Origin: Rebecca billardiae RCC1528
Lineage: Eukaryota; Protista; Haptophyta
Direction: 5' to 3'
NCBI GenBank assembly: GCA_965240325.2
Contig: OZ251228.1
Span: 2,976,001 to 3,040,000 of the forward strand
DNA: 64,000 nucleotides
In this document: positions 108 through 27,700 of the stretch, piece by piece
Layout of the letters: every line of letters begins with the position of its first letter
How positions within the stretch are numbered: position 1 is the first letter of the stretch
Translations under genes and position numbers: made by a program
Notes under the pieces: model-generated
The model's database searches: none
Told to the model about the DNA's origin: nothing
Seen by the model: only the letters and a program-made list of their open reading frames with translations

Positions 108-1844
108 GTGCGCGCGGCCGTGCGGCTGGGCGGCCACCCGCACCCGCCGCCCGGCGCCGGGCCGGCGCGCGCGCCGCCCGCGCTCGCGCGGCGCGCGCCG
201 TTCGCCACGGCGGTCGCGGCGGGCGGCATCCGCCTCCTCGGCGACGCCGAGCTCGCGGACGACGGCCTCGAGCTCACCCCGCTCCGCAAGGGCGTCGGGC
301 TGTGCGGCGCCGCGTGGGCGACCACGCCCGTGCGCATCGCGGACGGCTTTGAGACGGAGTTCGTGCTCGGCATGGGGCGGCCCGCGGGGGAGGCGCTGGG
401 CGGGGACGGGCTGGCGTTCGTGCTGCACGCGGACCCGGTGGGCGCGGACGCGCTCGGCGGCGCGGGGCTGCAGCTCGGGTACGAGGGGCTCGTCAACTGC
501 CTCGCCGTGCAGGTGCGTGTGTGCGTGCGTGTGCGTGCGCGTGCGTGCGTGCGTGCGTGCGTGCGCGCGCGTGCGTGCGTGCACGCGCGCGCGTCGCAGC
601 GCGCCCGGCGGCGGTGCGCGCCGCCCGGCTCACGCGCCGCGCCACGCGCCCAACGCGCTGCGCCGCGCGCGCCCCGGCCGCAGTTCGTCTCCAACCCCTC
701 CTTCGCCGGCGGCGACAGCGCAGCGCGCCGCTCGGCGGGGGCGCGCCGGCGCGCGCGCGGCTCGGACACCGAGTCTGACGAGGAGCGCGGCGGAGGGCGC
801 TCCGGGTACGACAGCAGCAGCAGCAGCAGCTCGGACGAGGGCGGCGGCGCGGACTCGGAGCGGCGGCTCGGGCGGCGCGCGGCGCGCGGCGCCTCGTCCC
901 GCCGCCGCGCGCTCGAGCACACCGAGCTCGTCGCCGTCCCGTCGCGGCCGGGCGTGCTGCGCGTGCCGCTCGCGTGGTCGGGCCGCGAGTGCATCGACCC
1001 GCACTCGGGCGAGCACTTCATCGCGCCCACGTTCAGGCGGCACGCGCAGCTGAGCGCGAGGCGCAAGGCGCGGCAGCTGTCGGCGCGCGCGAGGCTCGAG
1101 GCCGAGCGGCGCAGCGCCGACTACGGCCGCCGCCGCTCGCACCTGCACAACACGGTCAGCCTGCAGTCCAACGGTGCGCGCGCGCGCGCCGCGGCGCTCG
1201 TGCGAGCCTCCCAGCGCGCGCGGCCCCCCCGCCCCCGCCCCCCCCCCTTCCGCCGCTCACGCGCCGCTCGGCCGCGCACGCCCGCCGCCCGCCTCGCCGC
1301 CGCCCCGTGGCGCAGGCGAGAAGCCCAACTCGCCGCGCGCCGACTGCACGCTCGCGCGCGCCGCGCTGACGCACACGCAGCTCGACGACGGCGCGCCCAA
1401 GCGCGTGCGCATCGTGCTCGAGCCGTCGCGGTACGAGAGGGAGGCGGGCGCGGCCGAGTCGGCGCTCGGCTCGATGCGGCTGATGGTGTACGTGGCCGAC
1501 CTGCACGACAGCGCCGCCAACACGCAGGTGCGCGCGCGCGCGCGGCCGCTCGCCGCGGGCGCGGCGTCGTGCGCGGCCGTGCTCCCTCACTGACTCGCTC
1601 GCTCGCTCGCTCGCTCACGCGCGCCCACGCCCACGGCCGCCTCACTGTGCCCCCCTGTGCTCAGGCGGTGCTCAACATGGAGGTGGACCTGGGCTCTCTC
1701 TTCCGGCACTGGAAGGGCGGCGCCATGTACGCGGGCTTCACCGCCTCGACCGGCCGGCTGTACGGCTCGCACGCGATCAGCGAGTGGACCTTCTACGAGG
1801 TGGTCAACGGCGAGCGCCACGCCGGCCGCCGCTCGGTCTTCTGA
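108..1844 (+). CDS. L-type (legume-like) lectin domain protein, spliced, 5' end uncertain (introns 513-683, 1174-1315, 1528-1664)
   Basis: Motifs GDAELADDGLELTP...GAAW...GFETEF...GGDGLAFVLH...LGYEGL.NCLAVQF and C-terminal YAGFTASTG...HAISEWTF. Removing three GT..CAG introns joins the frames. Confidence 0.75.
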   Translation: MRAAVRLGGHPHPPPGAGPARAPPALARRAPFATAVAAGGIRLLGDAELADDGLELTPLRKGVGLCGAAWATTPVRIADGFETEFVLGMGRPAGEALGGDGLAFVLHADPVGADALGGAGLQLGYEGLVNCLAVQVRVCVRVRARACVRACVRARACVHARASQRARRRCAPPGSRAAPRAQRAAPRAPRPQFVSNPSFAGGDSAARRSAGARRRARGSDTESDEERGGGRSGYDSSSSSSSDEGGGADSERRLGRRAARGASSRRRALEHTELVAVPSRPGVLRVPLAWSGRECIDPHSGEHFIAPTFRRHAQLSARRKARQLSARARLEAERRSADYGRRRSHLHNTVSLQSNGARARAAALVRASQRARPPRPRPPPFRRSRAARPRTPAARLAAAPWRRREAQLAARRLHARARRADAHAARRRRAQARAHRARAVAVREGGGRGRVGARLDAADGVRGRPARQRRQHAGARARAAARRGRGVVRGRAPSLTRSLARSLTRAHAHGRLTVPPCAQAVLNMEVDLGSLFRHWKGGAMYAGFTASTGRLYGSHAISEWTFYEVVNGERHAGRRSVF

Positions 1845-2324
1845 GACGTTGGAACTAGCAGTTTTACTCCGATTCTTTACCCGCACCCATCGGTTCGCGG
1901 TGGTTTGACGCGATGGGAAATCTCAAATCTGGCATATGATACCTCCATACAATCATAATCTGAGGTCGATCACAATCACACCTCGACCGCGGATTCACAT
2001 TCAGATATACAGTCATGTTTAAGTCGAATTTGTACTGTGTATGCCGTTCACGTGTTAATGACGTTTCGAAAACCGGACAGCCGCGCTAACACCTCTGATA
2101 ATTGACGATGTCCGAATAATTAGTCAATGGTATATATTAACGATATAATGCGTTTTCCCCCGCCTGATTCGATTTCGGCTAGATTCCCCACGCGACGAGT
2201 GCTAATTGATGACCAGCCTAGATCAATTAAGTCTCGTTGAAAACATTTGGCGCGCCGATTCGGACGCCGAAAGCGCACATGCCCCTGCACAACCCAACGC
2301 GCCGCCGCCGCACGATTGCACGGA

Positions 2325-5300
2325 ATGAACGACGCCCCGCACGTGATGACGTCGACGGAGAGCGACCGCCGGAGCCCGCGGCTCTCGCTGCGCTCGCTCG
2401 CGCCCGCCGCCCCCGTGGTGCCGAGCATGCTCGACGACGGCGCCCTCGCCTACGCCGTCATCCTGGGCGCGGTGTGCTACTACCTGCTCGCGCTCGCGCT
2501 GTGCTACGCCGCGCTCGGCGACGCGCGTGAGCAGCTCCTCCCGGTGGAGCGGTACGCGGCGCAGTGCACGGGCGCGGTGATCGTCGGCAGCACCGTGCTG
2601 CGCTCCATCCACCTCGCCTTCTCGCGCGGCCCCGTCTCCAACGCCGAGCTCGCGATGCTCGCGACCAACGCGGTCGCCGCCTCGTCCAACCTGCTGATGG
2701 GCGCGACCTCCACGCCCGTGCTCGTCGACCCGATCACCGGCACCTCCGAGTTCATGGTGCGCTGGTGCGAGTACACGTCCCTCGGCTTCCTCATGACCTT
2801 CGTCGTCGAGGCCATGTCCGCGCGCTCGGTGCGCGAGGCGCTCGCGCTCGCCGTGCTGATGGGCGTGAGCACGTGCTGCGGCCTGCTCCTGCCGCTGTGC
2901 AAGAGCCCGCGCGCGTGGGGCCTGCTGATGGCCTTCGCCTTCGCCACGTACGCGCCGCTCTTCCCGCGCCTCGTCCGCTGCCGCCGCGCGTACCACGACG
3001 CCGCCGCGTCGTGCAGCAGCGCGTCCGAGGTGGGCCGCGTGGTGAGCGCCAAGGTGGGCCACGAGCTGATGGCGTGCTGCACGGTGCTGTGGTCGCTCAT
3101 CGTCCTCGACTACGTGCTCGCGTGGGCGGTGGCGGCGTGCCTCGGGGAGCGGTACGGCACCGGCGCGTCGCGGCCGCAGTGGCCCTTCGTGCTCGACTGC
3201 GTGATCGACCTCGCCGCCAAGATGCTGTACGCGCACCTGATCGCGAGCTCGCACGCGCACGTGCCGCTCGAGGCGGAGCGGCAGCAGGCGCGCTGGATCC
3301 GCGAGGCGATGGACGTGGTGTGGGCGGGCTCGCACGACACCATCGTGATCTCCGAGCTGCACGGCGACGGGACGGCGCGCAGCATCGGCTCGAAGGGACT
3401 GTCCGCGCTGCTCGGCGAGGTGCACGCGCGCGAGTGGACGACGTGGCGCGCGCACGCGCTCACGCCCGCGACGCCGGCCACGACCGCGTCGCGCGCCGAC
3501 GCGCTCTCCGAGTCCTCCTCCGCCTCGTCCTACGCCTCGTCCGCGTGCGCCGAGCCTCCCGAGCGCACCGCGCTCGACGAGTTCGGGCCCGCCGTCGAGA
3601 CGGCGTACGAGCCCGACCCGACGCCCGCCACGCCACCCACCACCCCCCAGTCCAAGCTGTCGCGCAGCGGGCGCGTGCGCGGCGCGCCGAGCGCGCAGCA
3701 GCAGGCCGTGCAGCGCGCGTTTGAGCAGCTGATCGCAGACGCGTGGGCCGCGACCGCCGACGCGGACGGGGCGACGGCGATGCTCACGTGGCGGCTGCCG
3801 CACGGCGGCGCGCGCGGCGGGCTGCAATGCGAGGTGCGCGCGACCCGCTGCCGGCACGAGCCGCTGCGCGGCGCGAGCGGCAGCGCCGTGCGCGGAGCAG
3901 CGGCTCGGCTTGGCGCGCCGCCCTTTCTGGTGCTCGTGCTGCGCGACGTGAGCGCGCTCGTGCGCGCGGCCGAGGTCGAGAGGAGCCTGCTGGCGCAGAT
4001 CGCGGAGAAGACGCTGCTCGCCGAGCGCATCGGGCGGAAGAAGGACGAGGAGGCCAACCGCTTCTCGCGGCACGAGGTGAAGAACTGCGTGCTCGCCGCG
4101 ATCGCGCAGTGCGAGGCGCTCGCCGAGTGGCACGCCAAGACCAAGGCGAGCTTCGCGGCCGCGGACACGCAGCCGCTCACCGCCGGGCTGGCCGACCTCT
4201 CGTCGATGCTGCAGCGCTCGCTGAACACGGTGCTCGCCGCGGCGATGGCGAAGGAGCTGGCGAACGGCGAGTACCTCGCCAAGCCCGAGCCAACCGACGT
4301 CGAGGCGCTGCTCCGCGACAACCTCGCCTCGGGCAGCGCGCGCTTTGAGCTGCGCACGACCCCGGCGCCGCTCCCGCCCATCTCGCTTGACCCGCAGCTG
4401 CTCTTCTGCGTGCACCGCAACGCCGTCTCGAACGCGGTCAAGTACGGCTGCCAGACGAGCAAGATCGAGACGGAGGTGCGCCTCGAGGGCGACGTGCTTG
4501 AGCTGCGCGTGACCAACGCGCCGGGCCCGGGCCACGCGGCGCTGCTCGCCACGGGCAGCGCCGAGCGCGTGTTCGTGCGCGGCCTCAGGCTGCACGAGTC
4601 AGCCGAGCTCGGCAGCGGCGGCGGCGGCGCGGGCGCGCACCACGCGAGCGCCGATCCGAACGGCCGGCTCTCGGCGGGCGACGGCGGCTGGATCATGCGC
4701 CGCTGCGCGCAGGCGCTCGGCGGCGAGTGCTCGATCCGCTTCGAGCCCGCGCAGACGGTGTTCGAGCTGCGCTGCCCGGTGCTCACGCCGCGCGCGGACG
4801 ACGGCGGCGGGTGCGCGGGCGCGGAGGCGGCGGCGCCGTTCCAGCTGCCGGCTGGCACGGTCTGCGTCGGCATCGACGACTCCAAGGTGCAGCGCGTCAT
4901 CCTCAAGAAGATCTTCGCCGCGCTGGGCGCGGACGCCGAGCACGTGCACATCCTCGGCGAGCAGGACGAGCACATCCTCAGCGTCGTGCCCACGCTCGCC
5001 CAGGCGGTGCGCGCGCACCCCACGCAGCGGCTCCTCGTGATCGGCGACGAGCACCTCGACCTGGCCGAGGGGTGCGCGTGCACCACCGTCTCGTGCTCGC
5101 GCGCGTTCGGCGAGCTGCGCGCGCTGCTGGCGGGGGAGGAGCTCGAGCGCGTGCTCCTCGTCATCCGCTCGGCGAACGACTCGCGCGCGGACGTGGAGCG
5201 CTACCGCGTGCACGCGCACGGCGTGCTGCCCAAGCGCGGCTTTGCCAAGCAGCCGACCATCGACGCGGTGCGCCCGCTGTGGGAGCAGCGCTTCGAGGCG

Positions 5301-5678
5301 CCGCGCGCGCACGGCGCGGGCGTGGGCGCGCGGCCCGACGCGGCCGACGCGGTCGCCAGGCTCGTGGGCGCGCAGCCGCGCCGCGGCTCCCCGCTGGGCG
5401 CCGACCCCGACCTGCTGTGCGAGGTGAGCCGCACGGTCTCACGGCTGTGCCGAGAGCTGAGCGCGCGCGGCCTGCCGTGGGCGGCCGTGCGCCGCCACCT
5501 GATCTCGCTCAAGGGCGAGCTCGTCTCGCTCAACGCGGTGCTCGGCGTGGCGAATGAGCGCGTGTCCGACGTGGTGCGGCACGTGGACGCACTGCTCGAG
5601 CATCGTGACGAGCCGCCCGCCTTCTGGTCGGAGTGGCACACGCTGCTCGCGCAGATCAACGCCGCGCTCGAGGTGTGA
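2325..5678 (+). CDS. Rhodopsin-histidine kinase-receiver(-Hpt-like) hybrid sensor
   Basis: About 8 hydrophobic helices including helix-C-like VRWCEY, helix-F-like LWS and helix-G DLAAK (Lys codon 3219-3221). Then H-box RHEVKN (4071), N-box NAVSNAVKYG, G2-like SAGDGGWI, and receiver GIDDS..IGDEHLD..IRSAND..LPK. First ATG at 2325; intronless. Confidence 0.85.
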   Translation: MNDAPHVMTSTESDRRSPRLSLRSLAPAAPVVPSMLDDGALAYAVILGAVCYYLLALALCYAALGDAREQLLPVERYAAQCTGAVIVGSTVLRSIHLAFSRGPVSNAELAMLATNAVAASSNLLMGATSTPVLVDPITGTSEFMVRWCEYTSLGFLMTFVVEAMSARSVREALALAVLMGVSTCCGLLLPLCKSPRAWGLLMAFAFATYAPLFPRLVRCRRAYHDAAASCSSASEVGRVVSAKVGHELMACCTVLWSLIVLDYVLAWAVAACLGERYGTGASRPQWPFVLDCVIDLAAKMLYAHLIASSHAHVPLEAERQQARWIREAMDVVWAGSHDTIVISELHGDGTARSIGSKGLSALLGEVHAREWTTWRAHALTPATPATTASRADALSESSSASSYASSACAEPPERTALDEFGPAVETAYEPDPTPATPPTTPQSKLSRSGRVRGAPSAQQQAVQRAFEQLIADAWAATADADGATAMLTWRLPHGGARGGLQCEVRATRCRHEPLRGASGSAVRGAAARLGAPPFLVLVLRDVSALVRAAEVERSLLAQIAEKTLLAERIGRKKDEEANRFSRHEVKNCVLAAIAQCEALAEWHAKTKASFAAADTQPLTAGLADLSSMLQRSLNTVLAAAMAKELANGEYLAKPEPTDVEALLRDNLASGSARFELRTTPAPLPPISLDPQLLFCVHRNAVSNAVKYGCQTSKIETEVRLEGDVLELRVTNAPGPGHAALLATGSAERVFVRGLRLHESAELGSGGGGAGAHHASADPNGRLSAGDGGWIMRRCAQALGGECSIRFEPAQTVFELRCPVLTPRADDGGGCAGAEAAAPFQLPAGTVCVGIDDSKVQRVILKKIFAALGADAEHVHILGEQDEHILSVVPTLAQAVRAHPTQRLLVIGDEHLDLAEGCACTTVSCSRAFGELRALLAGEELERVLLVIRSANDSRADVERYRVHAHGVLPKRGFAKQPTIDAVRPLWEQRFEAPRAHGAGVGARPDAADAVARLVGAQPRRGSPLGADPDLLCEVSRTVSRLCRELSARGLPWAAVRRHLISLKGELVSLNAVLGVANERVSDVVRHVDALLEHRDEPPAFWSEWHTLLAQINAALEV

Positions 5679-17751: not shown

Positions 17752-20700
17752 TCATCCGCGGAAGATGAAGTGCAGCGCGCTGAGCGCGCGCACAATCGCC
17801 GTGCCCATCGCGCCGAGCAGCGCGCGATTCGAGCGCGCGACCAGCCGGTTGGCGGCGTGCGCGAGGCTGGGCCCCGCGTGCGCGGCGAGCAGCAGCGCGG
17901 GCTCGTGCACGAGCAGCGCGCCGAGCAGCGCGCCGCCCCACGCGCGCAGCATGGCGCGCGTCTTGGCCTCGCCGAAGAGGCGGCCGTACACGATCACGAG
18001 GGCGCACAGCCCGACGAACGTGCCGAGCATCAGCGCCCACGCGCACGCGGCGTGCGCGCGCAGCCGGCAGCGCTCGCGCTCGGGCGGCGCGTCGTCCTCG
18101 GCGGGCGCGCACGGCCGCGCGCGCGAGCCGCGCCGCCGGCGCGCGCCCTCCTCGCGCCGCGCCGTGTACCAGCGCACGAGCTGCGACTCGACCACGTGGC
18201 CGGCGCGCGGGCCGAGCGCGCCGTCCGGCAGCGGCACGGCGCCGAGCTCGCGCGTGAGGCGGCGCTGCTCGACCGCGGTGAGCGGCTCGCCCAGCTCGGT
18301 CATGAGCACGCCCACCTCGGCCGCGTCGAGCGCGCCGCTGCCCGAGAGGTCGTACATCTTGAAGGCGACGCGCAGCGCGTGCAGCTCGGCGCTGCGCACC
18401 GAGTCGGCGGAGGAGGCGGCGGAGGTGGCGCGGGAGGAGGCGGAGGAGGCGGCGGGGCTCACGCGGCTGCGGTGCGCGCGCCCAGAGCCGGGGTGCGGCG
18501 GGGTGGGCGGCGCACAGCCACAGGCCCAGCGCTCGGGCGCGGGCGCGGCGGCGGCGGCGCGCGCGGCGGCGGCGCTGCCGGGCGGCGGCGGCGCGAGGGG
18601 CGGCAGCGGCGGGCGCGCGCGCGCGCGCGGCGGCGAGGCCGGGCGCGGCGGCGAGGGCGGCGGCGAGTGCGCGCCGCTGCCGCCGCCCGCCGGCGGCGTG
18701 CAGCTGCTCGACGCGAGCGACGGCGGCGTGGCCGACGCGGCGCCGCGCGGCGAGTCGGCCGCCGCCGCGCGCCGCGCCGCCGCCAGCCCGAGCGGCAGGT
18801 CGGCCATCACAGGCGCCACCACCTGGTCCCACCCGCCGCGCCGCGCCGCGCGGTGCGCGGCCGCGCGCAGCTCGCGCCGCGTCGCCGCGCCGAGCGCGCC
18901 GCCGCCGCCGCCGGCCGCGAGCGTGGCGCGGCGCGGCGCGCCGCCGGCCGCGCCGCCCGGCGGCGCGACCGGCGCCGGCGGGTGCGGCGCGCCCGGCGGC
19001 GCGCCCGCGCAGCCCAGCCCGACGCGGCCCGCCGCGCGCGGCAGCTGTGCGTGGGTGGCCGCGCGGCGCGCGGCGCTCGGCCGCGGCGCGAGCGGCGGCG
19101 CCGCGTGCCGCGCGCCGCGCGGCCGCGCGCCGCGCGGCGGCCGCTCGGCCGCGCCGCCGCCCTCCGCGTCCGAGTCGGCGCCGCTCTCGAAGCCGCACGC
19201 GTCGCGCGGCGACGACGCGGCGGACGCGCGCGCCGACGGCGGCGCGCCGCTGCCGCCGCCGCCGCCGCCGCCGCCGCGCGCCTCGGCCGCCTCGAGCGGC
19301 CCGTCGTCGTCGCCGTCGCCCTCGTCCGCGGCGGCGGCGGCGATCGCGGCGGCGCTGATGCGCGCCGAGCCGGTGGCGAGCAGGGTGGGCTGCGCGCGCA
19401 CGACGGTGGCGCCCACCATCGGCAGCTCGGGGCCGCGCGAGCGCGCGCTGTCGGGCGCGAGCCTCGCACTGTACGCGCCGCCGCTGCCCGCGCTCCGCGC
19501 CGAGCGCGCGGAGACGCTGCCGCCGTCGCCGCCGCCGTCCGCGCGCTGACAGCGCTGGCGGCACGGTGCGCCCGAGCCGCGCGGCGCGCGAGAGCGAGCG
19601 CTGCCGTGCGCAGAGCCGAGCGCGGCGGGCGCGGCTGCGCCGAGCTCGGGCGAGGGTGCGGCTGCGGGGCCGAAGAAGTCCGCATCGGTGGCGGCGCCCA
19701 CCGCCTCCGCCTCCGCCTCCGCCTCGGCCTCCGCCTCCGCCTCCGCCTCGGCCTCCGCCTCCGCCACGCCGACGCCGTCGGCGCACGTGCCGTGCGCGCC
19801 GCGCGCGCGCTGGTCGGAGGAGGACGGCGGCTGCGCGCACGCGGCGGCGCACGCGGCGGCGCCCGCGGCGGCGCCCTCCTCGGGCGGCGGCCGTGCGCCG
19901 CCCGCGCCGTCCGCGGCGGCGCGCGGCGGCGTGCGCCCGCTCGCGATCGCGGGCGCCGCCGAGGCTGGGCGCGCGCCGCGCGCGAGCGCGCACGCGCCGG
20001 CGCGGTGCGCGGTGCTGGTGGGCGCCACGCGGTCGAGCGCGCGCGCGCACCCGCGCGCCTCCGCGCTGCGCGGGCGCGACGCGGGCGCGTCGGCGGCGGC
20101 CGCGCGCCACAGCGGCAGCTGCGCCTCCGCCGCGCGCGTCGCCCACAGCGGAGCCGCGGGCGGCGGCGGCGGCGGGTGCGGAGACGACGACGACGCGCGT
20201 GCGGCGGCGGGTGCGGCGGCAGCCGGCGCGGCCGGCGGCGGCGAGCAGGCGGCGGGCGGGCGCGCGCTGAGCGGCGGCGTGCCCGGCGCGCCCGCGGCCG
20301 GCAGGCGCGGGTGCTGCAGCTGCGGCAGCGGCGAGCCGAGCGCGGGCGTGGGCGCGCACGAGGCGGTGGGCGAGGAGAAGGGCGGCGTGGGCACGGCCAC
20401 GCGCAGCACCGGCCGCCGCGCGCCGCCCGCCGCTCCGGCCCCCGCCGCGAGGGCGGCGCGCCACGCGGGCGAGCTCGCGGCCGAGGGCGGGTGGTGCTCT
20501 GCGCACGGCGCCTCGGCGTCCGGCTCGAGCGCGGCGGGCGGCGGCGGGCGGCGGCTCCAGCAGCGCGTGCCGCCGAGGAGCGAGGCGGCGCACTGCAGCA
20601 CCACCGGCGAGCCCAGCCACCCGGACCCGCCTCCGCGCGCGGGCGAGGCGGCCGCCGCGCGCTGCTCGGCGGCGGCGGCGGCGGCGGTGGCGGCCGCGAC

Positions 20701-21705
20701 CGCGTGCGCCGCCGCCTTGGCGCGCGCGTCGCGCTGTGCGCCGAGCTCCGCCTCGGTCGCGCGCTGCGAGAGGAGCGCGTGCAGCCCGACGTACAGCCGG
20801 CGCGCGGGCGCGGCGCGGGCGCGCGCGCCGCACGAGCGCCAGATGGCGTTGAAGGCGGCAAGCGCGGGCCCGGCCAGCAGCGCGCCCACCGCACCGTTCA
20901 CGGCCGCGCGCGCCGCGCCGCCGTGCGCGGGCTCCTGCTCGGGCTGCTCGGGCTGTGGCGCGTACAGCATGCACTCGGCGACCAGCTGCAGCGCGCCCAG
21001 GTTGAAGAGCGTCTGCACGAGCTCGGCGCGGCGCGGGAACGCCTCGGCGGGCGCGAGCAGCAGGCTGAGCGCGCTGTGCCCGTCGGCGAGTGCGAGCGCC
21101 GCGCGCCGCGCCGCGTCCGCCCACGAGCCCTGCTGCCGCCGCCGCCGGTCCGAGCCCGAGTCCCAGCGCACCGACGGGCCGAAGCGCTCGTGCGCGGGCG
21201 CGTAGGGCGAGAGGCCGCCTGGCGAGAACAGGCTGCCGCCCGGCGAGAGCAGCGAGCGCGCGTCGGGCGAGGGCGGCCGGCTGGGCGCCGAGCGGCACCA
21301 CCCGGGCGCCGGCCGCGCAGCCGGCCGCTCAGCCCCAGCCTGAGCCTCAGCCTGATCGAGGCGCGAGGCCTGCAGCGGGGAGCTCGGGCGCACGCGCTCG
21401 CGCGCCCAGCGCATGGAGGCGGAGGGCGCGCGCGCCGGCCGCGCCGGCGGCGTGCGGCTGCGCGGCGGCGCGGGTCGCACGAGAGGCGAGGCGCTGCGTG
21501 CGCTGCGCGCGCTGCTCGGCGGGCGGCCGCGCACCGGGCGCACGGAGCCGACGCGCGGCGCGGGGCCCACGCCCGCACCGCACCCGCACCCGCGGGCGTC
21601 GGCGTCGGCGGCCGCGTCGGCGTCGGCGTCGGGTGCGGGTGCGTACGCGCGGGGCGGCACGGCCGGCGAGTTGTCTCGCGTCGAGGCGGCGGCCGGGCTG
21701 GCCAT

Positions 21706-21738
<33 letters not shown>

Positions 21739-24700
21739 TGCGCAGAGGCTGCCCACGCGCGAGGGGAGCAGCTGCGGGGAGAGACGCACCGCCAACCGCG
21801 GGCCCAACCGCGGGCTGTGGCGCGGGCTGTGGCGCGGGCTGTGGCTCGGGCTGCGCGCGAGGGGCTGCACGCGCGCGTGCGCCCGCCCGCCCGCGCCGTC
21901 GTCCGGGTCGGAGAGCCGCCGCTCGTCGGCGCGCGAGCCGCGGGGCGGCGAGGACGAGGAGAAGGAGGCGCGCGACGTGCGCGGCGCGCCGGCGCGCGCG
22001 GCGCGCGACGCGCGCGCGCTCGCCGCCGCAGAGGCCTGCTCGGCGCGCGACGCGCGCGCGCTCGCCGCGCTCGTCACCGCCGCCGCCGCCGCCGCCGCCG
22101 CGCGCAGCCGGCGGCGGCCGAGCGGCGTCTCCGCCGCCGAGCCGTGCGCGGACGCGCCCGCCCGCCACAGCAGCCGCTCGCGCGCCGCGCCCAGCTTGGA
22201 GACGTGCCCTCCGGTGCCGAGCTCGCGCGCGCGCCACGCGACGTAGCTGCGCCGCGCGTGCGCGTCCGCGAGGCCGGCGAGCAGCAGCGCGAGCGCGTTG
22301 GTGCACGCGAGGAGGTAGACGAGCCGGTACACCGTGCGGTTCTCGCGCTGCCCCTGCGCCGGGCTGAGCAGCACCGCCGCACCCTCCGCCGCGGAGAAGG
22401 TGTTGACGCGCGCCGGGCCCACGGCAGCCACGCCGCCGCCGCCCTCGGCCGCGGGCTGCACCGAGATGGTCGCAAAGTCGGTGAGGTGGTTGCACGCGCA
22501 GTAGAGCAGCGACGGGTCGGGCCCGACGACGGTGGCGCACCCGTCGGTGGACCAGGCGCCCGCGCCCTCGTCCCACCAGTGGCACGCGTCGAGCGCGCCG
22601 CAGCCGGGGCCCGAGTAGGGCGGCTCGCACGCGCACGCGCCCTCCGCGCCGCTCGCGCCGCCGAGCACGCACGCGCCGTGCCCGCCGCACGGCGCGCACT
22701 CGGCGTGCGCGCAGCCGGGCGGCAGCCACTCGGCGCACGTGCCGCTCGGCCCGTACTGCAGCGCCGGCGCGCCCGCGTCCGCGCGCGGCAGTCCGAGCAG
22801 CACAGGCGCGGGCAGGTTGGCGACCGTGAGCGCGGGGCCCGCGCCCGACGCGCCCGCAGCGAAGAGCGAGACGGAGAAGACGCGCGAGGAGAGGCCCGAC
22901 GCGCTGGCGTTGGGCGCGCTGGCGTTGGCGCGCGCCGCGGTGCCGTGCACGTTGCGCGCGATCGAGTAGACCACCAGGTCGACCGCGCCCACATTGCTGC
23001 CGCCCACGTTGCTGCCGCCGAGCAGCTGTGCGGGCAGCGAGACAGAGCCGCCCGCCGCGGCGGAGAGCGTCGTCGCGCCCGCCTCGAGCGCGGCGGCGCT
23101 CGCGCGCGCGGCGGACACCGCCACCTCGACGCCCGCCACGCCCGCCGCCGGCTCGCCCGGCGCCGCGCCCGCGAGCAGCGCGGCGGCGAGCGCGGCCGCG
23201 GCCGCGCTCGCCGCGCCGCCAATCTGCGCCGCCGCCGCCGCCAGCGCCGCCTCCGAGCCGGGCGCGGGCGGCGCGAGCGCGGCGTCCATCGCGCCGAGCA
23301 GCTGCGCGGCGACGCGCTCGGCCACGCCGCTCTGCGCCGCGGCCGCGGCGATCGCGCCCGCCTGCGCCAGCGCGGACGCGCGCGCGGCGCCGTCGAGCGC
23401 GGCCGCGGGCGCGGCGGCGAGCACGGCGGCGAGCGCGCCCGCCGCCTGCTCGCGCGCCGCGGCCGTGTGCGCGCCGTCCGCCGCGACGAGCTCGGCGGAG
23501 AGCGCGAGCAGCTCGCGCGACGCGTCGGCGGCGGCGGGCGCGCTCGCGTTCGCGCCGCCGCCGCCCTCCGCCCCCGCGCCGAGCAGCTCGCCGAGCGCGC
23601 GCACCAGCTGGCGCGCGCCGCCCAAATCGCCCGCCGACTGCGCCGCGCGCGCGGCCGCGAGGCCGTCCGCGTACGAGGGCGAGGCGGCGAAGGCGGGCGC
23701 GGCGGGGTCGGGCGGCGCGACGGCGACGCTCGCCGCGGCGCTCGCGCACGCGCCGCGCGCGTCGCACACCGTCGCCACCACCGAGCCGTTGCCCGGCGGC
23801 AGCGCGACGGCCAGCAGCCACGCCGTGCCGCGCGGCTCGGCGAGCGCCGCGCCCGCGCCCGCGCCCGCGCCGCCGGCGCCGGCGTCGGCCGCGTGCCCAA
23901 ACGCGTAGGAGAGCGGCAGGTCGTCGTCGTCGTCGTCCGCCCAGCCGGGCGCGGAGAGCGCGAACGGCGTGCGCAGCGCCACGCCCGCGCGCGGCTCCAC
24001 TTCCACGCCGCCCCCGTGCGGCGGCCGGTTGAGCGCAAGCACGAGCGTCGCCGCGGCAGAGGCGCCGAGCACGCCCAGCCGCGCGGCCGCGGCCGCGCGC
24101 TCGGCGGTGGCGGGCGCGAGCGTCGCGCTGAGCGTGAGCGCGTAGCGGCCGCCGGGCGCCAGCGCGCCCGAGCGGAAGGCGAGCACCGCGCCGAGCGCGC
24201 CCGTCGTCGTCACGCCCGCCGTGTCCGCCAGCTCGACGCCGCCCTCGGCGTGTGCGTGTGCGTGTGCGGCGTCGGCGTCGGCGTCGGGCCCGCCCAGCGG
24301 CCGCGCGCTCCAGCTGAGGTTGAAGTCGCGCTCGGCCCACGCCCACGCGCCGCCCGGCGCGGCGGGGTCGGGCGTGGCGAGGGCGACGCTCGCGCGCACG
24401 CTCAGCCGATCGCCCGGCAGCGCCCACTGCGCGCTCGGCGCGCGCCCCGCGCCGCTGCGCTGGAACGCGATGGCCGGCAGCGGCAGCTCCGAGCGCGCGA
24501 CGCGCACGAGCGCGCGCGCCACGGCGGGCGCGCGCGCGGCGGCCGGGTGCGCCGCGCCCGCCGCGCGCGTGACGGTGAGCTCGAGCGCGTACTCGCCCAC
24601 GCCCAGCGCGCCCGCCGGCACGGCCAGCGCCGCGGCCGACGTGTTGAGCGCCTCGCCCAGCGCGCCCGACGCCGGCAGCTCCCACTCGGAGCCGTCCGAG

Positions 24701-27700
24701 CCGAGCGCGAGCGCGCGCCACGCGTACCGCAGCGGCGGCGGGGCGGCACCGTCGGCGTGTGGCTCGTTCGGGTCGGTCGAGGCGGAGCCGTCCACGACGA
24801 ACGGCTCGCAGCCGGGCAGCACGGCACCGCCGCCGCCCGCTGACGACGCGTTGGCCGCGCCGCCCGCGCCCAGCAGCGGCGTGGCCGCGCTCGCGCGCAC
24901 CTCGACGGCGGTGGCGCCGAGCACGGCGCGCAGCGGCTCCGGGCGCACGAGCAGCCGCACGCGCGCCGTGCTCGACGCGCCATCCGCCGCCGCCGCCTCC
25001 CACGCGCGCACCTCGAGCTCGTACGCAAAGCCGGCGCTGAGCGCGTGCGGGCGCAGCAGCAGCGACGCGCGCTCGCCCGCCGCGCCGTCCAGCTCGGGCG
25101 CGCGCGCGCCGAGCGACGCGGCGCCCTCCGCGCCGAGGAGCCGCGTGCCGTTGGGCGGCGCACGTCCGTCGTCACCGAGGGGCGCCACGCCGACGAGGCG
25201 CCACGAGAAGGACAGCGCGGCGCCCGACGCCGCGCCGCACGGCGCTGCGACCGCGCTGGCGACCAGCAGCTGCGCAGAGCCCGCGCGCGCCACGCGCTCC
25301 GCCGGGCCGGCGACGACGAGGCTGGGCGCGCGCGCGGCCGGGCGGCGCACGACGTGGTGCACGGGCGCAGACACGAGGCCGAGGACGGAGGAGCGAACGC
25401 GCAGCGCGACGGTGAAGTCGCCCGCGCCGGGCAGCGGCGCCGCGCCGCCCGCGCCGAGCGTGAGCGTGGGCGTGCGCGGCGGCAGCGCCGCGAGCGCCGC
25501 GTTCGCCGCCTCGGCCGCGCCGCCGTCCTCCGAGGCGGGCGGCACCAGCCGCCACTCAAAGTCGAGCGGCACGACGCCGCCGCCGCTCGAGCCGCTGCCG
25601 TCGAGCGTGAGCGACGCCGCGCCGTCGGCCTCTGCGCCTAGGTCGCACGCAGCGAGCTGCGCCGGCCCCGACAGCGCGGCGACGGGCGCGGCACAGGCGG
25701 AGGCGGGTGCGCCGCCGCCGGCCTCTGCGCCGAGCTCACACGGCGCGTCCGCGTCGATGGCGACGGCCGCGGCGGGCGCGAGCAGCGACGGCTCGGCGCA
25801 CGGCGCGGGCGCGCACGCGGCGGGCGCGAGCACGCCGCCGCGCACGCCGATGCGCGCGCCCGGCCGCGCGAGCGTGCCGCTGCCGAGCTGCGCGACGAGC
25901 GTCGAGTCGTCCGCCCAGTAGCAGCGCGGCGCGGGCGCGGCCGCCACCGCCGGCCCGCGCAGCAGCGCGACCGTGTCGTCGTCGAGCACCGCCTCGCACG
26001 GCGCGAGCGCCGAGCCCATGCGCGCGCGGTCGGTCGGCTGCCGCCCAAACCACACGCGCACGACGCGCAGCGCGCCGTCGAACGCCGCGCCGAGCGGCTC
26101 GGGCGCGTGCAGCCCGGTAAACTCGAACCACGCGCCGCCCTCGGCGCCGCCCTCGGCGCCGCCGGGCGCGGGCTCGTACTGCGCGCCGCCGTTGAGCGAG
26201 ACGCGCACCGCCGCGCGCCCCTCCGCCGACGGCGGCGTGCGCACGCGCGCGTGCGTGCCGTTGGCCCACTCGGCCGGCACGGCGGCGCCGCCGGCGCCGA
26301 AGGCAAACGCCAGCGCGAGGCCCTCGCCCGCGTCGAGGCCCGCGCCCACCACCGTGACCACCGTGCCGCCGCGCGCGGGGCCCGAGCGCGGCGCGAGCGC
26401 GCGCACGGCCGCCGCGCCGTCCGCGTACGCCGTGAAGGGCGCGCCCGAGCGGCTCGTCGTGTTCGCGCGGCCGGCGCCGAGCGAGAGCTCGAGCGCGAGC
26501 GGCAGCGGCGGCGCGGAGGGCGCGAGCGGCAGCGGCGGCAGCTCGCACGCCGCGCGCGCCGTGCCGTCGTCGAGCGGCGAGAGCAGCGCCGCTGGCGCCG
26601 CGCAGCCGCCGCCGAGCGCGGGCAGCACGCAGCACAGCTCGCCCGCGCCGTACTGCGCAAAGCCAACGCCCTCGAGCGTCACCACCGTGCCGCCGCGCGC
26701 CGGGCCGGCCGACGGGCGCAGCGCGCTCACGACGAGCGCGGCCGCGTCGTACAGCTCGAAGCGCAGCCCGTCGCCGAACAGCGTGCGCACGGCGTGCGCG
26801 CCGCCGCCCAGCCGCAGCTCGGCCAAGTACGACGCCGCGGGCGCGGACGCCGGCAGCAGGCAGCGCGCCCTGCGGCCGTCCGCGCCGAGCGCCGCGTCGA
26901 CGGCGATGGGCGCGGCGGGCGCCTGCGGCGTGAAGACGCACACGCCGCCGCCGCCCACGCCGACCAGCCCCACGCCGCGGAAGGTGATCTCGTGCGACAC
27001 GTCGGCCGCGCCAGGCGCGCCGACCGGCGCGCCGAGCGGCTGTAGCCCGTCGAGCTGCGCGCGAGCGAGCGAGGGCGGCGGCGGCGGCGGCGGCGGGCTC
27101 GGCGGCGGCGAGGGCGGCGATGAGGGCGGAGGGCGCAGTGGGGGCGACGGCGGCACGCTGGGCGGCGGCTGCGTGGGCGGCTGCGACGGCGGTAGTGAGG
27201 GCGGCTGCGACGGCGGCTGCGAGGGCGGCTGCGACGGCGGTGGTGACGGCGGCTGCGACGGCGGCAGCGAGGGCGGCTGCGAGGGCGGTAGTGACGGCGG
27301 CTGCGACGGCGGCTGCGAGGGCGGCTGCGAGGGCGGTAGTGACGGCGGCTGCGTGGGCGGCTGCGACGGCGGCTGCGACGGCGGTAGTGACGGCGGCTGC
27401 GACGGCGGCTGCGAGGGCGGCTGCGAGGGCGGCTGCGACGGCGGTAGTGACGGCGGCTGCGACGGCGGCTGCGACGGCGGCTGCGAGGGCGGCTGCGAGG
27501 GCGGTGGTGACGGCGGCTGCAAGGGCGGCTGCGACGGCGGCTGCAACGGCGGTAGGGACGGTGGCGGGCTCGGTAGCGGCGGCGCCGGTGGCGGCGATGG
27601 AGGCGGGCTCGGCGGCGGGCTCGGTGGCGGCGGCGCAGGTGGCGGCGAAGGAGGCGGGATAGGCGGCGGGCTCGGTGGCGGCGGCGCAGGTGGCGGCGAA

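What the first reader, a model, noticed from the sequence alone, without database searches (positions are those of the whole stretch)
2325..5678. Single-chain light-sensing phosphorelay candidate: 8-TM rhodopsin + atypical His kinase + receiver + Hpt-like tail
Seen: eight hydrophobic segments, the last seven lining up with microbial rhodopsin helices, with DLAAK equivalent to bacteriorhodopsin D212/K216, followed by H-box, HATPase, receiver and a helical tail. Known: enzyme rhodopsins have an extra TM0, and the best-characterised green-algal histidine kinase rhodopsins (2c-Cyclop) end in a cyclase. Inference: this is a cyclase-less rhodopsin kinase of a distinct type that could be an uncharacterised photoreceptor.
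Basis: partly seen in the sequence, partly recalled or inferred. Interest (0 to 1): 0.8.

Follow-up and report, generated by a model that had tools for sequence, protein, structure and literature searches.

The report
Hidden rhodopsin-histidine kinase light sensor gene
This intact, intron-free gene of a very GC-rich haptophyte-type alga joins an eight-helix retinal-type light-sensor domain to a bacterial-style signalling kinase and receiver; it belongs to a haptophyte and diatom family that standard domain searches miss, and in this copy the last relay module has lost its key histidine.

Summary
Window 2325-5678 (+) is one intact 1117-codon gene.

- **Rhodopsin domain.** Residues 38-308 form eight membrane helices. 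With a 77-sequence alignment they fold confidently (pLDDT 95.7) into a microbial-rhodopsin fold with an extra TM0. The best match is the enzyme rhodopsin Rh-PDE (Z 24.2; family profile E 9e-9). K299, R146, E149 and D295 sit at the Schiff-base lysine, arginine and counterion positions. The lysine and arginine are invariant in 77/77 relatives.
- **Downstream modules.** A PAS-like stretch is only weakly supported. The histidine-kinase core has an H-box at H583 and an atypical NxPG G1 box. The receiver carries D851/D852, D908, S949 and K970. A helical tail closes the protein.
- **Tail.** In most relatives the tail carries the HPt motif HxLKG. Here the histidine is Ile1060, so this copy has a degenerate HPt.

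Pfam recognises only a sub-threshold HATPase_c in this protein. Relatives come from pavlovophyte haptophytes and diatoms and are annotated as hypothetical. I found no paper describing the family.

Cyclase-less rhodopsin kinases are already known (Ot-HKR), so this is a new variant of a known kind. The scan had already flagged at least eight paralogues elsewhere in this genome. Retinal binding and light-regulated kinase activity remain untested.

The parts
2325..5678 (+). Complete single-exon coding sequence, 1117 codons plus the stop codon
   Evidence: ORF list and translation. GC3 is 97.6% in this frame. It is collinear with the 1174-aa homologue P0001 over 98% of its length. A relatively AT-rich intergenic stretch lies upstream at 1860-2250.
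2436..2525 (+). TM0, the extra N-terminal transmembrane helix (residues 38-67)
   Evidence: Hydropathy and AF2 helix. Structurally it is covered only by the 8-TM Rh-PDE (model 4-309 against chain 44-335, Z 24.2). The profile alignment to Rh-PDE starts inside its TM0.
2544..3248 (+). Seven-helix microbial-rhodopsin core (residues 74-308), with a B-C loop beta-hairpin
   Evidence: AF2 pLDDT 95.7 and pTM 0.91. All 50 Foldseek rows shown (42 of the hits at E<=0.001) are microbial rhodopsins. Z is about 20 to sensory rhodopsin II and bacteriorhodopsin, with 215-225 residues aligned at rmsd 2.5-2.8. The family profile against PDB returns 12 hits, all rhodopsins.
2760..2774 (+). Helix-C motif RWCEY: R146 (position of BR R82), E149 (BR D85 / Rh-PDE E164), Y150 (BR W86)
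   Evidence: Profile alignment to Rh-PDE together with the residue equivalences given in the Rh-PDE paper. Among 77 relatives R is present in 77, E in 71 and W in 70. Only this protein and P0001 have Y.
3207..3221 (+). Helix-G motif DLAAK: D295 (BR D212 / Rh-PDE D292) and K299, the predicted retinal Schiff-base lysine (codon 3219-3221)
   Evidence: Aligned to Rh-PDE D292/K296 and to the DVVMK motif of bestrhodopsin. K is present in 77/77 relatives and D or E in 72/77.
3249..3338 (+). Cytoplasmic helical linker that continues TM7 (residues 309-338)
   Evidence: One continuous AF2 helix spans model residues 256-308. It aligns with the linker region of the Rh-PDE structure 7d7q. W333 and D338 are conserved across the family.
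3339..4004 (+). PAS-like middle region with a long low-complexity insert (residues 339-560)
   Evidence: The family motifs are SSDVIxIS...G and ...VxVxRDISER. The best PDB profile hits are the PAS domain of Brucella LOV-HK and a 'sensory box' protein, but only at E 0.14-0.87. This is suggestive, not demonstrated.
4005..4274 (+). DHp-like helical region with the H-box RFSRHEVKN; H583 (codon 4071-4073) is the predicted autophosphorylation site
   Evidence: H is present in 35/36 aligned relatives. It lies about 110 residues upstream of the N-box. No HisKA-type Pfam match was found, so the assignment rests on motif and position.
4347..4784 (+). HATPase-type catalytic domain (residues 675-820): N-box HRNAVSNAVKYG, atypical G1 box TNAPG (N731), G2 box GDGGW
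   Evidence: Pfam HATPase_c scores 25.2 bits in this protein against a cut-off of 26.4. It matches 35/36 relatives, and P0001 passes at 28.8. hhalign against the E. coli ArcB catalytic domain gives probability 96.6 and E 6e-10. The profile against PDB hits WalK/YycG at E 5e-5. N731, N703, G734 and G787 are invariant in 36/36.
4851..5294 (+). Receiver domain (residues 843-990): D851, D852, D908 (predicted phospho-acceptor, codon 5046-5048), S949, K970
   Evidence: hhalign of the family profile against ten E. coli receivers gives E 2.4e-4 over 118 columns spanning the whole domain. The five landmark residues fall on CheY D12/D13/D57/T87/K109. Language-model features score 0.93 to Response_reg clusters, and 19 of the 20 hits carry Response_reg. 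Pfam Response_reg matches only 7/41 relatives weakly. The landmarks are conserved in 40-41 of 41.
5406..5672 (+). Degenerate HPt-like helical tail (residues 1028-1116). Ile1060 (codon 5502-5504) sits where the family has the HxLKG histidine; His1058 lies two residues upstream
   Evidence: The family consensus is LHxLKGDL, with His in 25/34 tails. This protein has Ile, and P0001, P0002 and P0003 have Ala. hhalign against six E. coli HPt domains gives E 0.0039 and places the family His on ArcB H717. Pfam Hpt matches 7/34 weakly. UniRef names the Diacronema relative 'HPt domain-containing protein'.

Best explanation
The gene encodes a membrane photoreceptor of the enzyme-rhodopsin kind.

Shown: the architecture, the fold, the homologies and the residue conservation.

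Inferred, step by step:
1. An eight-helix microbial-rhodopsin domain binds retinal at K299. R146, E149 and D295 form the counterion complex. Val160 replaces the proton donor of pumps, so this is a sensor and not a pump.
2. TM7 continues as a long cytoplasmic helix into a PAS-like segment and then the dimerisation/His-phosphotransfer helices.
3. Light-driven movement of TM6/TM7 changes autophosphorylation of H583 by the attached GHKL ATPase domain.
4. The phosphoryl group passes to D908 of the fused receiver.
5. In most family members the next acceptor would be the histidine of the C-terminal HPt-like module. In this paralogue and its closest relatives that histidine is lost (Ile1060). The relay therefore most likely ends at the receiver. 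The output would then go through a separate HPt protein or through phosphorylation-dependent interactions of the receiver with the pseudo-HPt tail.
For: **Fold.** AF2 with 77 homologues gives pLDDT 95.7. All Foldseek top hits are microbial rhodopsins, with Rh-PDE first. VIA-align gives Z 24.2 over 280 residues to Rh-PDE, including TM0 and the linker, and Z about 20 to sensory rhodopsin II and bacteriorhodopsin. The nearest ESM Atlas shape is a bacteriorhodopsin cluster.

**Sequence.** The family profile against PDB gives Rh-PDE E 9e-9, bestrhodopsin 2.8e-4 and ChRmine 0.009, and all 12 hits are rhodopsins. E149, D295 and K299 fall on Rh-PDE E164, D292 and K296. K and R are invariant in 77/77 representatives of 50%-identity clusters.

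**Kinase.** hhalign to the ArcB catalytic domain gives probability 96.6. HATPase_c matches 35/36 relatives. H583 is conserved in 35/36.

**Receiver.** There is a full-length hhalign match with all five landmark residues and language-model support.

**Co-occurrence.** The 2-sequence kinase profile matched 75, and both kinase and receiver profiles 44, of the 151 proteins carrying the rhodopsin domain.

**Tail.** Family HxLKG against Ile here.

**Real gene.** GC3 is 97.6% and a relative is encoded on a transcript-like contig.
Against: - No experiment exists: retinal binding, absorbance and kinase activity are all unknown.
- Pfam Bac_rhodopsin does not match this protein and matches only 3/77 relatives.
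- Several retinal-pocket positions differ from bacteriorhodopsin: W86 to Tyr, Y185 to Ile, P186 to Val, W189 to Tyr (BR numbering from my own knowledge).
- The G1 box lacks the canonical Asp (NxPG instead of DxGxG), so ATP binding could be altered.
- The DHp has no profile support, only a motif.
- The PAS and HPt assignments are statistically weak.
- No public sequencing run was listed, so expression of this particular gene is not shown.
- I could not read model coordinates, so the statement that K299 faces the pocket rests on alignment and not on measured geometry.
Confidence: 0.6

Rival explanations
1. The membrane domain is a rhodopsin-fold homologue that no longer binds retinal. It would act as a chemo-, lipid- or voltage-sensing input domain for the kinase.
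For: Pfam's rhodopsin model fails. Four pocket positions that are aromatic or Pro in bacteriorhodopsin are changed, and the W86 equivalent is Tyr only in this protein and P0001. Sequence identity to solved rhodopsins is 11-17%.
Against: The Schiff-base lysine and the helix-C arginine are invariant in 77/77 divergent relatives. The two counterion carboxylates are kept in 71/77 and 72/77, and the W182 equivalent in 75/77. That pattern is hard to explain without a chromophore. Rh-PDE, the best match, is a proven retinal protein with similarly low identity to other rhodopsins.
Confidence: 0.15
2. This paralogue is a signalling-dead or purely regulatory copy. It would be a pseudo-kinase with a pseudo-HPt that modulates other family members in the same genome, for example by heterodimerising or acting as a phosphate sink, and would not relay a signal itself.
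For: The HPt histidine is lost in this protein and in its nearest relatives. The Rebecca sp. relative P0002 has lost the kinase and receiver altogether but keeps the rhodopsin, middle region and tail. The G1 box is atypical. The scan's notes list at least eight other paralogues in this genome. HATPase_c is below Pfam's cut-off in this protein.
Against: H583, the N-box, the G2 box and all five receiver landmarks are intact here. The NxPG G1 box is invariant across 36/36 relatives. It is therefore a conserved family trait, not decay in this copy. The ORF is intact, with strong codon bias.
Confidence: 0.15
3. The ORF is not a functional gene. It would be either a chance long ORF in very GC-rich DNA or a recent pseudogene.
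For: GC-rich DNA here produces long ORFs in several frames, for example a 790-aa antisense ORF at 2223-4595. No expression data could be obtained.
Against: There is end-to-end homology to a 1174-aa protein and to hundreds of relatives. Codon-position GC is 72/53/98%. There are no stops in 1117 codons, and the functional residues are conserved.
Confidence: 0.03

Closest known systems
Histidine kinase rhodopsins of green algae (Chlamydomonas HKR1/COP5, 2c-Cyclop, Ostreococcus Ot-HKR)
   Same: One chain combines a microbial rhodopsin, a histidine kinase and a receiver. Like Ot-HKR, it has no cyclase (reviews read). The expected logic is the same: light modulates a His-to-Asp phosphotransfer.
   Different: It occurs in haptophytes and diatoms, not green algae. 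A PAS-like segment lies between the rhodopsin and the kinase, and an HPt-like tail follows the receiver. The rhodopsin domain is invisible to Pfam Bac_rhodopsin, and the G1 box is NxPG. Direct sequence kinship with green-algal HKRs could not be tested because no HKR sequence was available through the tools. The 2-sequence HMM search of 1.84 billion representatives returned only 316 proteins at E<=0.001, which suggests the family is well separated from the bulk of rhodopsins.
Rhodopsin phosphodiesterase of Salpingoeca rosetta (PDB 7cj3, 7d7q)
   Same: It is the best match by both sequence profile (E 9e-9) and structure (Z 24.2, 280 residues). It has eight helices with TM0, a shared VDxxxG B-C loop, the E/D/K triad at E164/D292/K296, a non-carboxylic residue at the BR D96 position, and a helical linker leaving TM7.
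   Different: Its output is a phosphodiesterase, not a two-component kinase. Identity is only about 15%.
Bestrhodopsin (PDB 7pl9, rhodopsin-bestrophin fusion)
   Same: Both rhodopsin modules of this entry match the family profile, and it is the third distinct PDB sequence hit after the two Rh-PDE constructs (E 2.8e-4). The helix-G D-x-x-x-K aligns.
   Different: It has tandem rhodopsins fused to an anion channel and contains no kinase.
Bacterial hybrid histidine kinases with HPt (ArcB, BarA, EvgS, TorS)
   Same: The module order is HK, then receiver, then HPt. The catalytic domain aligns to ArcB with probability 96.6. The receiver aligns to the E. coli receiver profile with all landmarks. The family tail His aligns to ArcB H717.
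   Different: The input is a rhodopsin. The H-box is HEVKN and no HisKA Pfam model matches it. In this gene the HPt histidine is replaced by Ile.

Membership tests
Microbial (type-1) rhodopsin | Seven-transmembrane rhodopsin fold | tested here: met
   AF2 pLDDT 95.7. Z is about 20 with 215-225 aligned residues to SRII and BR. All Foldseek top hits are rhodopsins.
Microbial (type-1) rhodopsin | Schiff-base lysine in helix 7 | tested here: met
   K299 aligns to Rh-PDE Lys296 and is invariant in 77/77 relatives.
Microbial (type-1) rhodopsin | Helix-3 arginine and carboxylate counterions (BR R82, D85, D212) | tested here: met
   These are R146, E149 and D295. E149 and D295 are aligned to Rh-PDE E164 and D292. 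They are conserved in 77, 71 and 72 of 77 relatives.
Microbial (type-1) rhodopsin | Aromatic retinal pocket (BR W86, W182, Y185, W189) | tested here: inconclusive
   The W182 equivalent W256 is kept. W86 is Tyr150, Y185 is Ile259 and W189 is Tyr263. The mapping to BR numbers uses motif alignment from my own knowledge.
Microbial (type-1) rhodopsin | Match to the curated profile Pfam PF01036 | tested here: not met
   There is no hit at E<=10 for this protein. Only 3/77 relatives match, with a best E of 4.8e-5.
Microbial (type-1) rhodopsin | Covalent retinal binding and a photocycle | not testable with these tools
   This needs expression with retinal and spectroscopy.
Enzyme rhodopsin (8-TM class) | Extra N-terminal helix TM0, with both termini cytoplasmic | tested here: met
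   Eight helices are present. TM0 is aligned to Rh-PDE by both structure and profile.
Enzyme rhodopsin (8-TM class) | Cytoplasmic enzyme domain joined to TM7 by a helical linker | tested here: met
   A continuous helix runs through residues 286-338, followed by the kinase.
Histidine kinase rhodopsin (HKR) | Rhodopsin, histidine kinase and receiver in one polypeptide | tested here: met
Histidine kinase rhodopsin (HKR) | Sequence kinship with green-algal HKR rhodopsin domains | not tested
   No green-algal HKR sequence could be obtained through the tools, and PDB holds no HKR structure.
Histidine kinase (GHKL, two-component) | H-box histidine in a DHp helix | tested here: inconclusive
   H583 lies in RFSRHEVKN and is conserved in 35/36. 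No HisKA-type profile matches.
Histidine kinase (GHKL, two-component) | N-box and G2 box of the ATP-binding domain | tested here: met
   N699, N703, G785 and G787 are conserved. hhalign to ArcB gives probability 96.6 and E 6e-10.
Histidine kinase (GHKL, two-component) | G1 box DxGxG | tested here: not met
   The protein has TNAPG, and the family has an invariant NxPG aligned to the Asp of ArcB and WalK.
Histidine kinase (GHKL, two-component) | Pfam HATPase_c above the gathering score | tested here: not met
   The score is 21.3-25.5 bits against 26.4 for this protein. The homologue P0001 scores 28.8.
Response-regulator receiver domain | Acidic pair, phospho-Asp, Thr/Ser and Lys at canonical positions | tested here: met
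   D851/D852, D908, S949 and K970 fall on CheY D12/D13, D57, T87 and K109 in a 118-column hhalign alignment with E 2.4e-4.
Response-regulator receiver domain | Match to Pfam PF00072 | tested here: not met
   There is no hit for this protein. Seven of 41 relatives match at E<=1.
HPt phosphotransfer domain | Phospho-accepting His in the HxxKG motif | tested here: not met
   Ile1060 occupies the His column, while 25/34 relatives have His.
HPt phosphotransfer domain | Profile similarity to known HPt domains | tested here: inconclusive
   hhalign against six E. coli HPt domains gives E 0.0039 and probability 8.6%. Pfam Hpt matches 7/34 weakly. There is no PDB hit.
PAS domain | Profile or fold similarity to PAS | tested here: inconclusive
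   The best PDB profile hits are PAS domains, but at E 0.14-0.87. There is no Pfam hit.

The most novel reading that the evidence does not exclude
The family to which this gene belongs would be a previously unrecognised class of retinal photoreceptor kinases. The architecture is an 8-TM rhodopsin, a PAS-like segment, a histidine kinase, a receiver and an HPt. It is widespread in diatoms and pavlovophyte haptophytes. It would give these major marine primary producers a rhodopsin-based light input into two-component signalling that current photoreceptor surveys miss. Within it, this paralogue and its nearest relatives show rewiring of the relay: the HPt histidine is lost, and in one relative the kinase and receiver are lost altogether.
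Probability: 0.5. Interest if true: 0.8.

Novelty: new variant of a known kind. Interest (0 to 1): 0.68.

Why it matters
Enzyme rhodopsins are few, and they are sought after both for algal photobiology and as optogenetic tools.

The photoreceptor surveys I read list enzyme rhodopsins mainly for fungi, green algae and choanoflagellates. One ocean metatranscriptome survey, which covered haptophytes and diatoms among other plankton, detected no rhodopsin-histidine-kinase transcripts in its dataset. If this family binds retinal, diatoms and haptophytes have a light-to-phosphorelay sensor that profile-based annotation overlooks.

The family would also supply a naturally light-addressable histidine kinase. 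This gene's degenerate HPt offers a natural comparison for how such relays are rewired among paralogues.

Tried and rejected
- Single-sequence AF2 of residues 1-352 gave an unusable model (pLDDT 47).
- Single-protein and 2-sequence profile searches against PDB found no rhodopsin. Only the 77-sequence profile did.
- The language-model atlas search on the membrane domain gave nothing useful (score 0.77).
- The word-index homology search with the whole protein found only one relative.
- The same search with the 44-sequence full-length alignment found nothing. I treat that as a failure of the prefilter, not as absence.
- No public sequencing run was listed for the gene, so read laying was not used and expression is untested.
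- hhalign of the receiver and tail profiles against the single ArcB sequence was too weak to use. It was repeated against small E. coli domain alignments.
- The DUF1761, Crp and Rx_N Pfam hits at E 0.02-0.2 were rejected as noise.
- The 790-aa antisense ORF at 2223-4595 was rejected as a GC-content artefact, given the codon-position GC of the + frame.
- A proton-pump reading was rejected because Val160 sits at the BR D96 donor position and the domain is fused to a kinase.
- My idea that the H-box and N-box are of the HisKA_2/HWE type is recalled from memory. Pfam did not support it, so it is not claimed.


Full report
**What is in the sequence**

Window 2325-5678 (+) is one uninterrupted reading frame of 1117 codons. 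The genome is extremely GC-rich, at 65-86% in 2-kb windows, so long ORFs appear in many frames, including a 790-aa antisense ORF. Codon-position GC in the + frame is 72/53/98%, which marks it as the coding frame.

The stretch 1860-2250 upstream is comparatively AT-rich and follows the stop of the preceding gene at 1844. The ATG at 2325 is the first in the frame. The product aligns from start to end with a 1174-aa protein, P0001, at 37% identity and 98% coverage. P0001 is encoded on a 3.6-kb transcript-like JGI contig. No intron needs to be assumed.

**What standard annotation sees**

Pfam on the protein or on its pieces reports only HATPase_c, at 21-25 bits against a cut-off of 26.4. It reports nothing for rhodopsin, HisKA, receiver or HPt. 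A single-sequence search of PDB gives only a marginal KdpD kinase hit. By routine criteria this is a 'hypothetical protein with a weak ATPase domain'.

**The membrane domain**

Hydropathy and the structure models give eight helices between residues 38 and 308.

An exhaustive HMM search of 1.84 billion cluster representatives, using the N-terminal domains of this protein and P0001, returned 316 proteins at E<=0.001 and 244 at E<=1e-10. I aligned 77 full-length domains (alignment A3). With that alignment AlphaFold2 gave pLDDT 95.7 and pTM 0.91, including a B-C loop hairpin and a TM7 that runs on as a long cytoplasmic helix.

- Foldseek against PDB lists only microbial rhodopsins in its top 50, led by the *Salpingoeca* rhodopsin phosphodiesterase.
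- VIA-align gives Z 24.2 with 280 aligned residues, model 4-309, to Rh-PDE 7d7q. That match includes the first helix and the linker.
- Seven-helix rhodopsins such as sensory rhodopsin II, *Acetabularia* rhodopsin and bacteriorhodopsin give Z about 20. They cover model residues ~40-287 only.
- The nearest ESM Atlas shape is a bacteriorhodopsin cluster.

Independently of the fold, the 77-sequence profile hits Rh-PDE at E 9e-9, bestrhodopsin at 2.8e-4 and ChRmine at 0.009. All 12 PDB hits up to E 10 are rhodopsins.

In those alignments the family motif R-W-C-E-W lies on Rh-PDE R-Y-A-E-W, and D-x-x-A-K lies on D-Y-A-A-K. After converting chain indices (offset 31), E149, D295 and K299 correspond to Rh-PDE Glu164, Asp292 and Lys296. 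The Rh-PDE paper equates these with bacteriorhodopsin D85, D212 and the retinal lysine.

Conservation across the 77 relatives:

| Position (BR numbering) | Residue in this protein | Residue(s) counted | Kept in relatives |
|---|---|---|---|
| Schiff-base Lys (K216) | K299 | K | 77/77 |
| R82 | R146 | R | 77/77 |
| D85 | E149 | E | 71/77 |
| D212 | D295 | D or E | 72/77 |
| W182 | W256 | W | 75/77 |
| W86 | Y150 | W | 70/77; Tyr only here and in P0001 |

The BR D96 position is Val160, and it is always hydrophobic in the family. This argues for a sensor and against a pump. Pfam's Bac_rhodopsin model matches only 3 of the 77.

I could not read model coordinates. The statement that K299 faces the pocket therefore rests on alignment to solved rhodopsins, not on measured geometry.

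**The cytoplasmic modules**

Local HMMs built from this protein and P0001 show that the same kinase region occurs in 75 of the 151 retrieved proteins. Kinase and receiver occur together in 44 of them.

*Kinase.*
- HATPase_c matches 35/36 aligned relatives.
- The family profile hits WalK/YycG at E 5e-5.
- hhalign against the catalytic domain of E. coli ArcB gives probability 96.6 and E 6e-10.
- H583, in RFSRHEVKN, is conserved in 35/36. The N-box and G2 glycines are conserved.
- The G1 box is an invariant NxPG in place of DxGxG.
- No DHp-type profile matches, so the H-box is assigned by motif and position.

*Receiver.*
- Pfam and PDB profile searches fail or are marginal.
- hhalign of the family profile against ten E. 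coli receiver domains, fetched, gives E 2.4e-4 over 118 columns spanning the whole domain.
- D851/D852, D908, S949 and K970 fall on CheY D12/D13, D57, T87 and K109.
- Language-model features point to Response_reg clusters at 0.93.

*Middle region.* Residues 339-560 carry PAS-like end motifs. They reach only E 0.14 against the PAS of Brucella LOV-HK. I call this region PAS-like and unproven.

**The tail**

Aligning the C-terminal ~100 residues of 34 relatives gives the consensus W...LHxLKGDL.
- hhalign against six E. coli HPt domains is weak (E 0.0039, probability 8.6%). It does place the family His exactly on ArcB H717.
- Seven of 34 tails match Pfam Hpt weakly.
- UniRef labels the *Diacronema lutheri* member 'HPt domain-containing protein'.

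The module is therefore probably a divergent HPt. In this gene the His column holds Ile1060, within RRHLISLKGEL, and His1058 lies two residues upstream. P0001, P0002 and P0003 have Ala there. Overall 25/34 tails keep the His. This paralogue therefore has a degenerate HPt, and the 'complete one-chain relay' reading does not apply to it.

**Who has it**

- Named relatives come from the pavlovophyte haptophytes *Rebecca* sp. RCC1486 and *Diacronema lutheri*.
- They also come from the diatoms *Cylindrotheca fusiformis*, *Corethron hystrix* and *Entomoneis* sp.
- All are annotated as hypothetical or uncharacterised.
- In a quick maximum-likelihood tree, this protein sits in a well-supported 10-member clade with P0001, the *Rebecca* protein and the *Diacronema* protein (quick search only, SH-aLRT 98).
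- The *Rebecca* relative keeps the rhodopsin (42% identity), the middle region and the tail, but lacks the kinase core and the receiver.

**Literature**

Histidine kinase rhodopsins are described for green algae, including the cyclase-less Ot-HKR.

I found no paper describing a rhodopsin-kinase family in haptophytes or diatoms.
- A metatranscriptome survey reported no rhodopsin-histidine-kinase transcripts in its dataset.
- In the passages of a survey of eukaryotic histidine kinases that my term search returned, no diatom or haptophyte kinase is linked to rhodopsin.
- A 2026 rhodopsin census mentions 17 sequence clusters of uncharacterised rhodopsins. The family may be among them.

The library is incomplete, so 'not found' is not 'not published'.

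**Earlier notes of this scan**

At least eight other loci of the same genome were read as the same hidden rhodopsin-kinase family in haptophytes and diatoms. My searches reproduce the family, its taxonomic range and the failure of Pfam independently. They add that this copy lacks the HPt histidine.

**Verdict**

The best reading is a retinal-type, eight-helix sensor that controls a His583-to-Asp908 phosphotransfer. Its terminal HPt-like module is no longer a phospho-acceptor.

- That the membrane domain is a true rhodopsin homologue is close to certain.
- Retinal binding is likely.
- Light control of an active kinase is plausible but unproven.
- I rate the whole mechanism at 0.6.

Noticed in passing
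window 27559-38777: There is an 11.2-kb array of about 220 copies of a 51-bp unit (17 codons if translated). Copies match at 93%, GC is about 85% and GC skew is strong (+0.39). Shorter 24- and 36-bp arrays lie just upstream at 27076-27616. Whether it is a coding Gly/Ala-rich repeat or a minisatellite was not examined.
   Followed up: no
P0002 (Rebecca sp. RCC1486, MMETSP1335), whole protein: This close relative keeps the rhodopsin domain (42% identity), the middle region and the HPt-like tail. It lacks the HATPase core and the receiver and has no H-box. It is either a natural rhodopsin-plus-tail variant or an assembly or splice artefact of the transcriptome.
   Followed up: partly
window 4515-4526 and alignment A4: The G1 box of the ATP-binding domain is NxPG in all 36 aligned family kinases, in place of the canonical DxGxG. 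This is a conserved family trait, and its effect on nucleotide binding is unknown.
   Followed up: partly
window 108-1844 (+): The ORF that ends just upstream carries a legume/L-type lectin domain (Pfam Lectin_legB, E 9e-10). This agrees with an earlier scan note of a giant protein ending here.
   Followed up: partly
window 2223-4595 (-): A 790-aa antisense ORF overlaps the gene, and several other long ORFs lie in other frames. They are best explained by the scarcity of stop codons in GC-rich DNA, given the 98% GC3 of the sense frame.
   Followed up: partly
window 18000-27000: Nine kilobases have 82-86% GC with positive AT skew, ahead of the tandem array. The content was not examined.
   Followed up: no
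window 2772-2774 (Tyr150): The position equivalent to bacteriorhodopsin W86 is Tyr only in this protein and P0001 among 77 relatives. The two proteins nearest in the tree have Trp. This may be a colour-tuning or pocket change specific to these copies.
   Followed up: no
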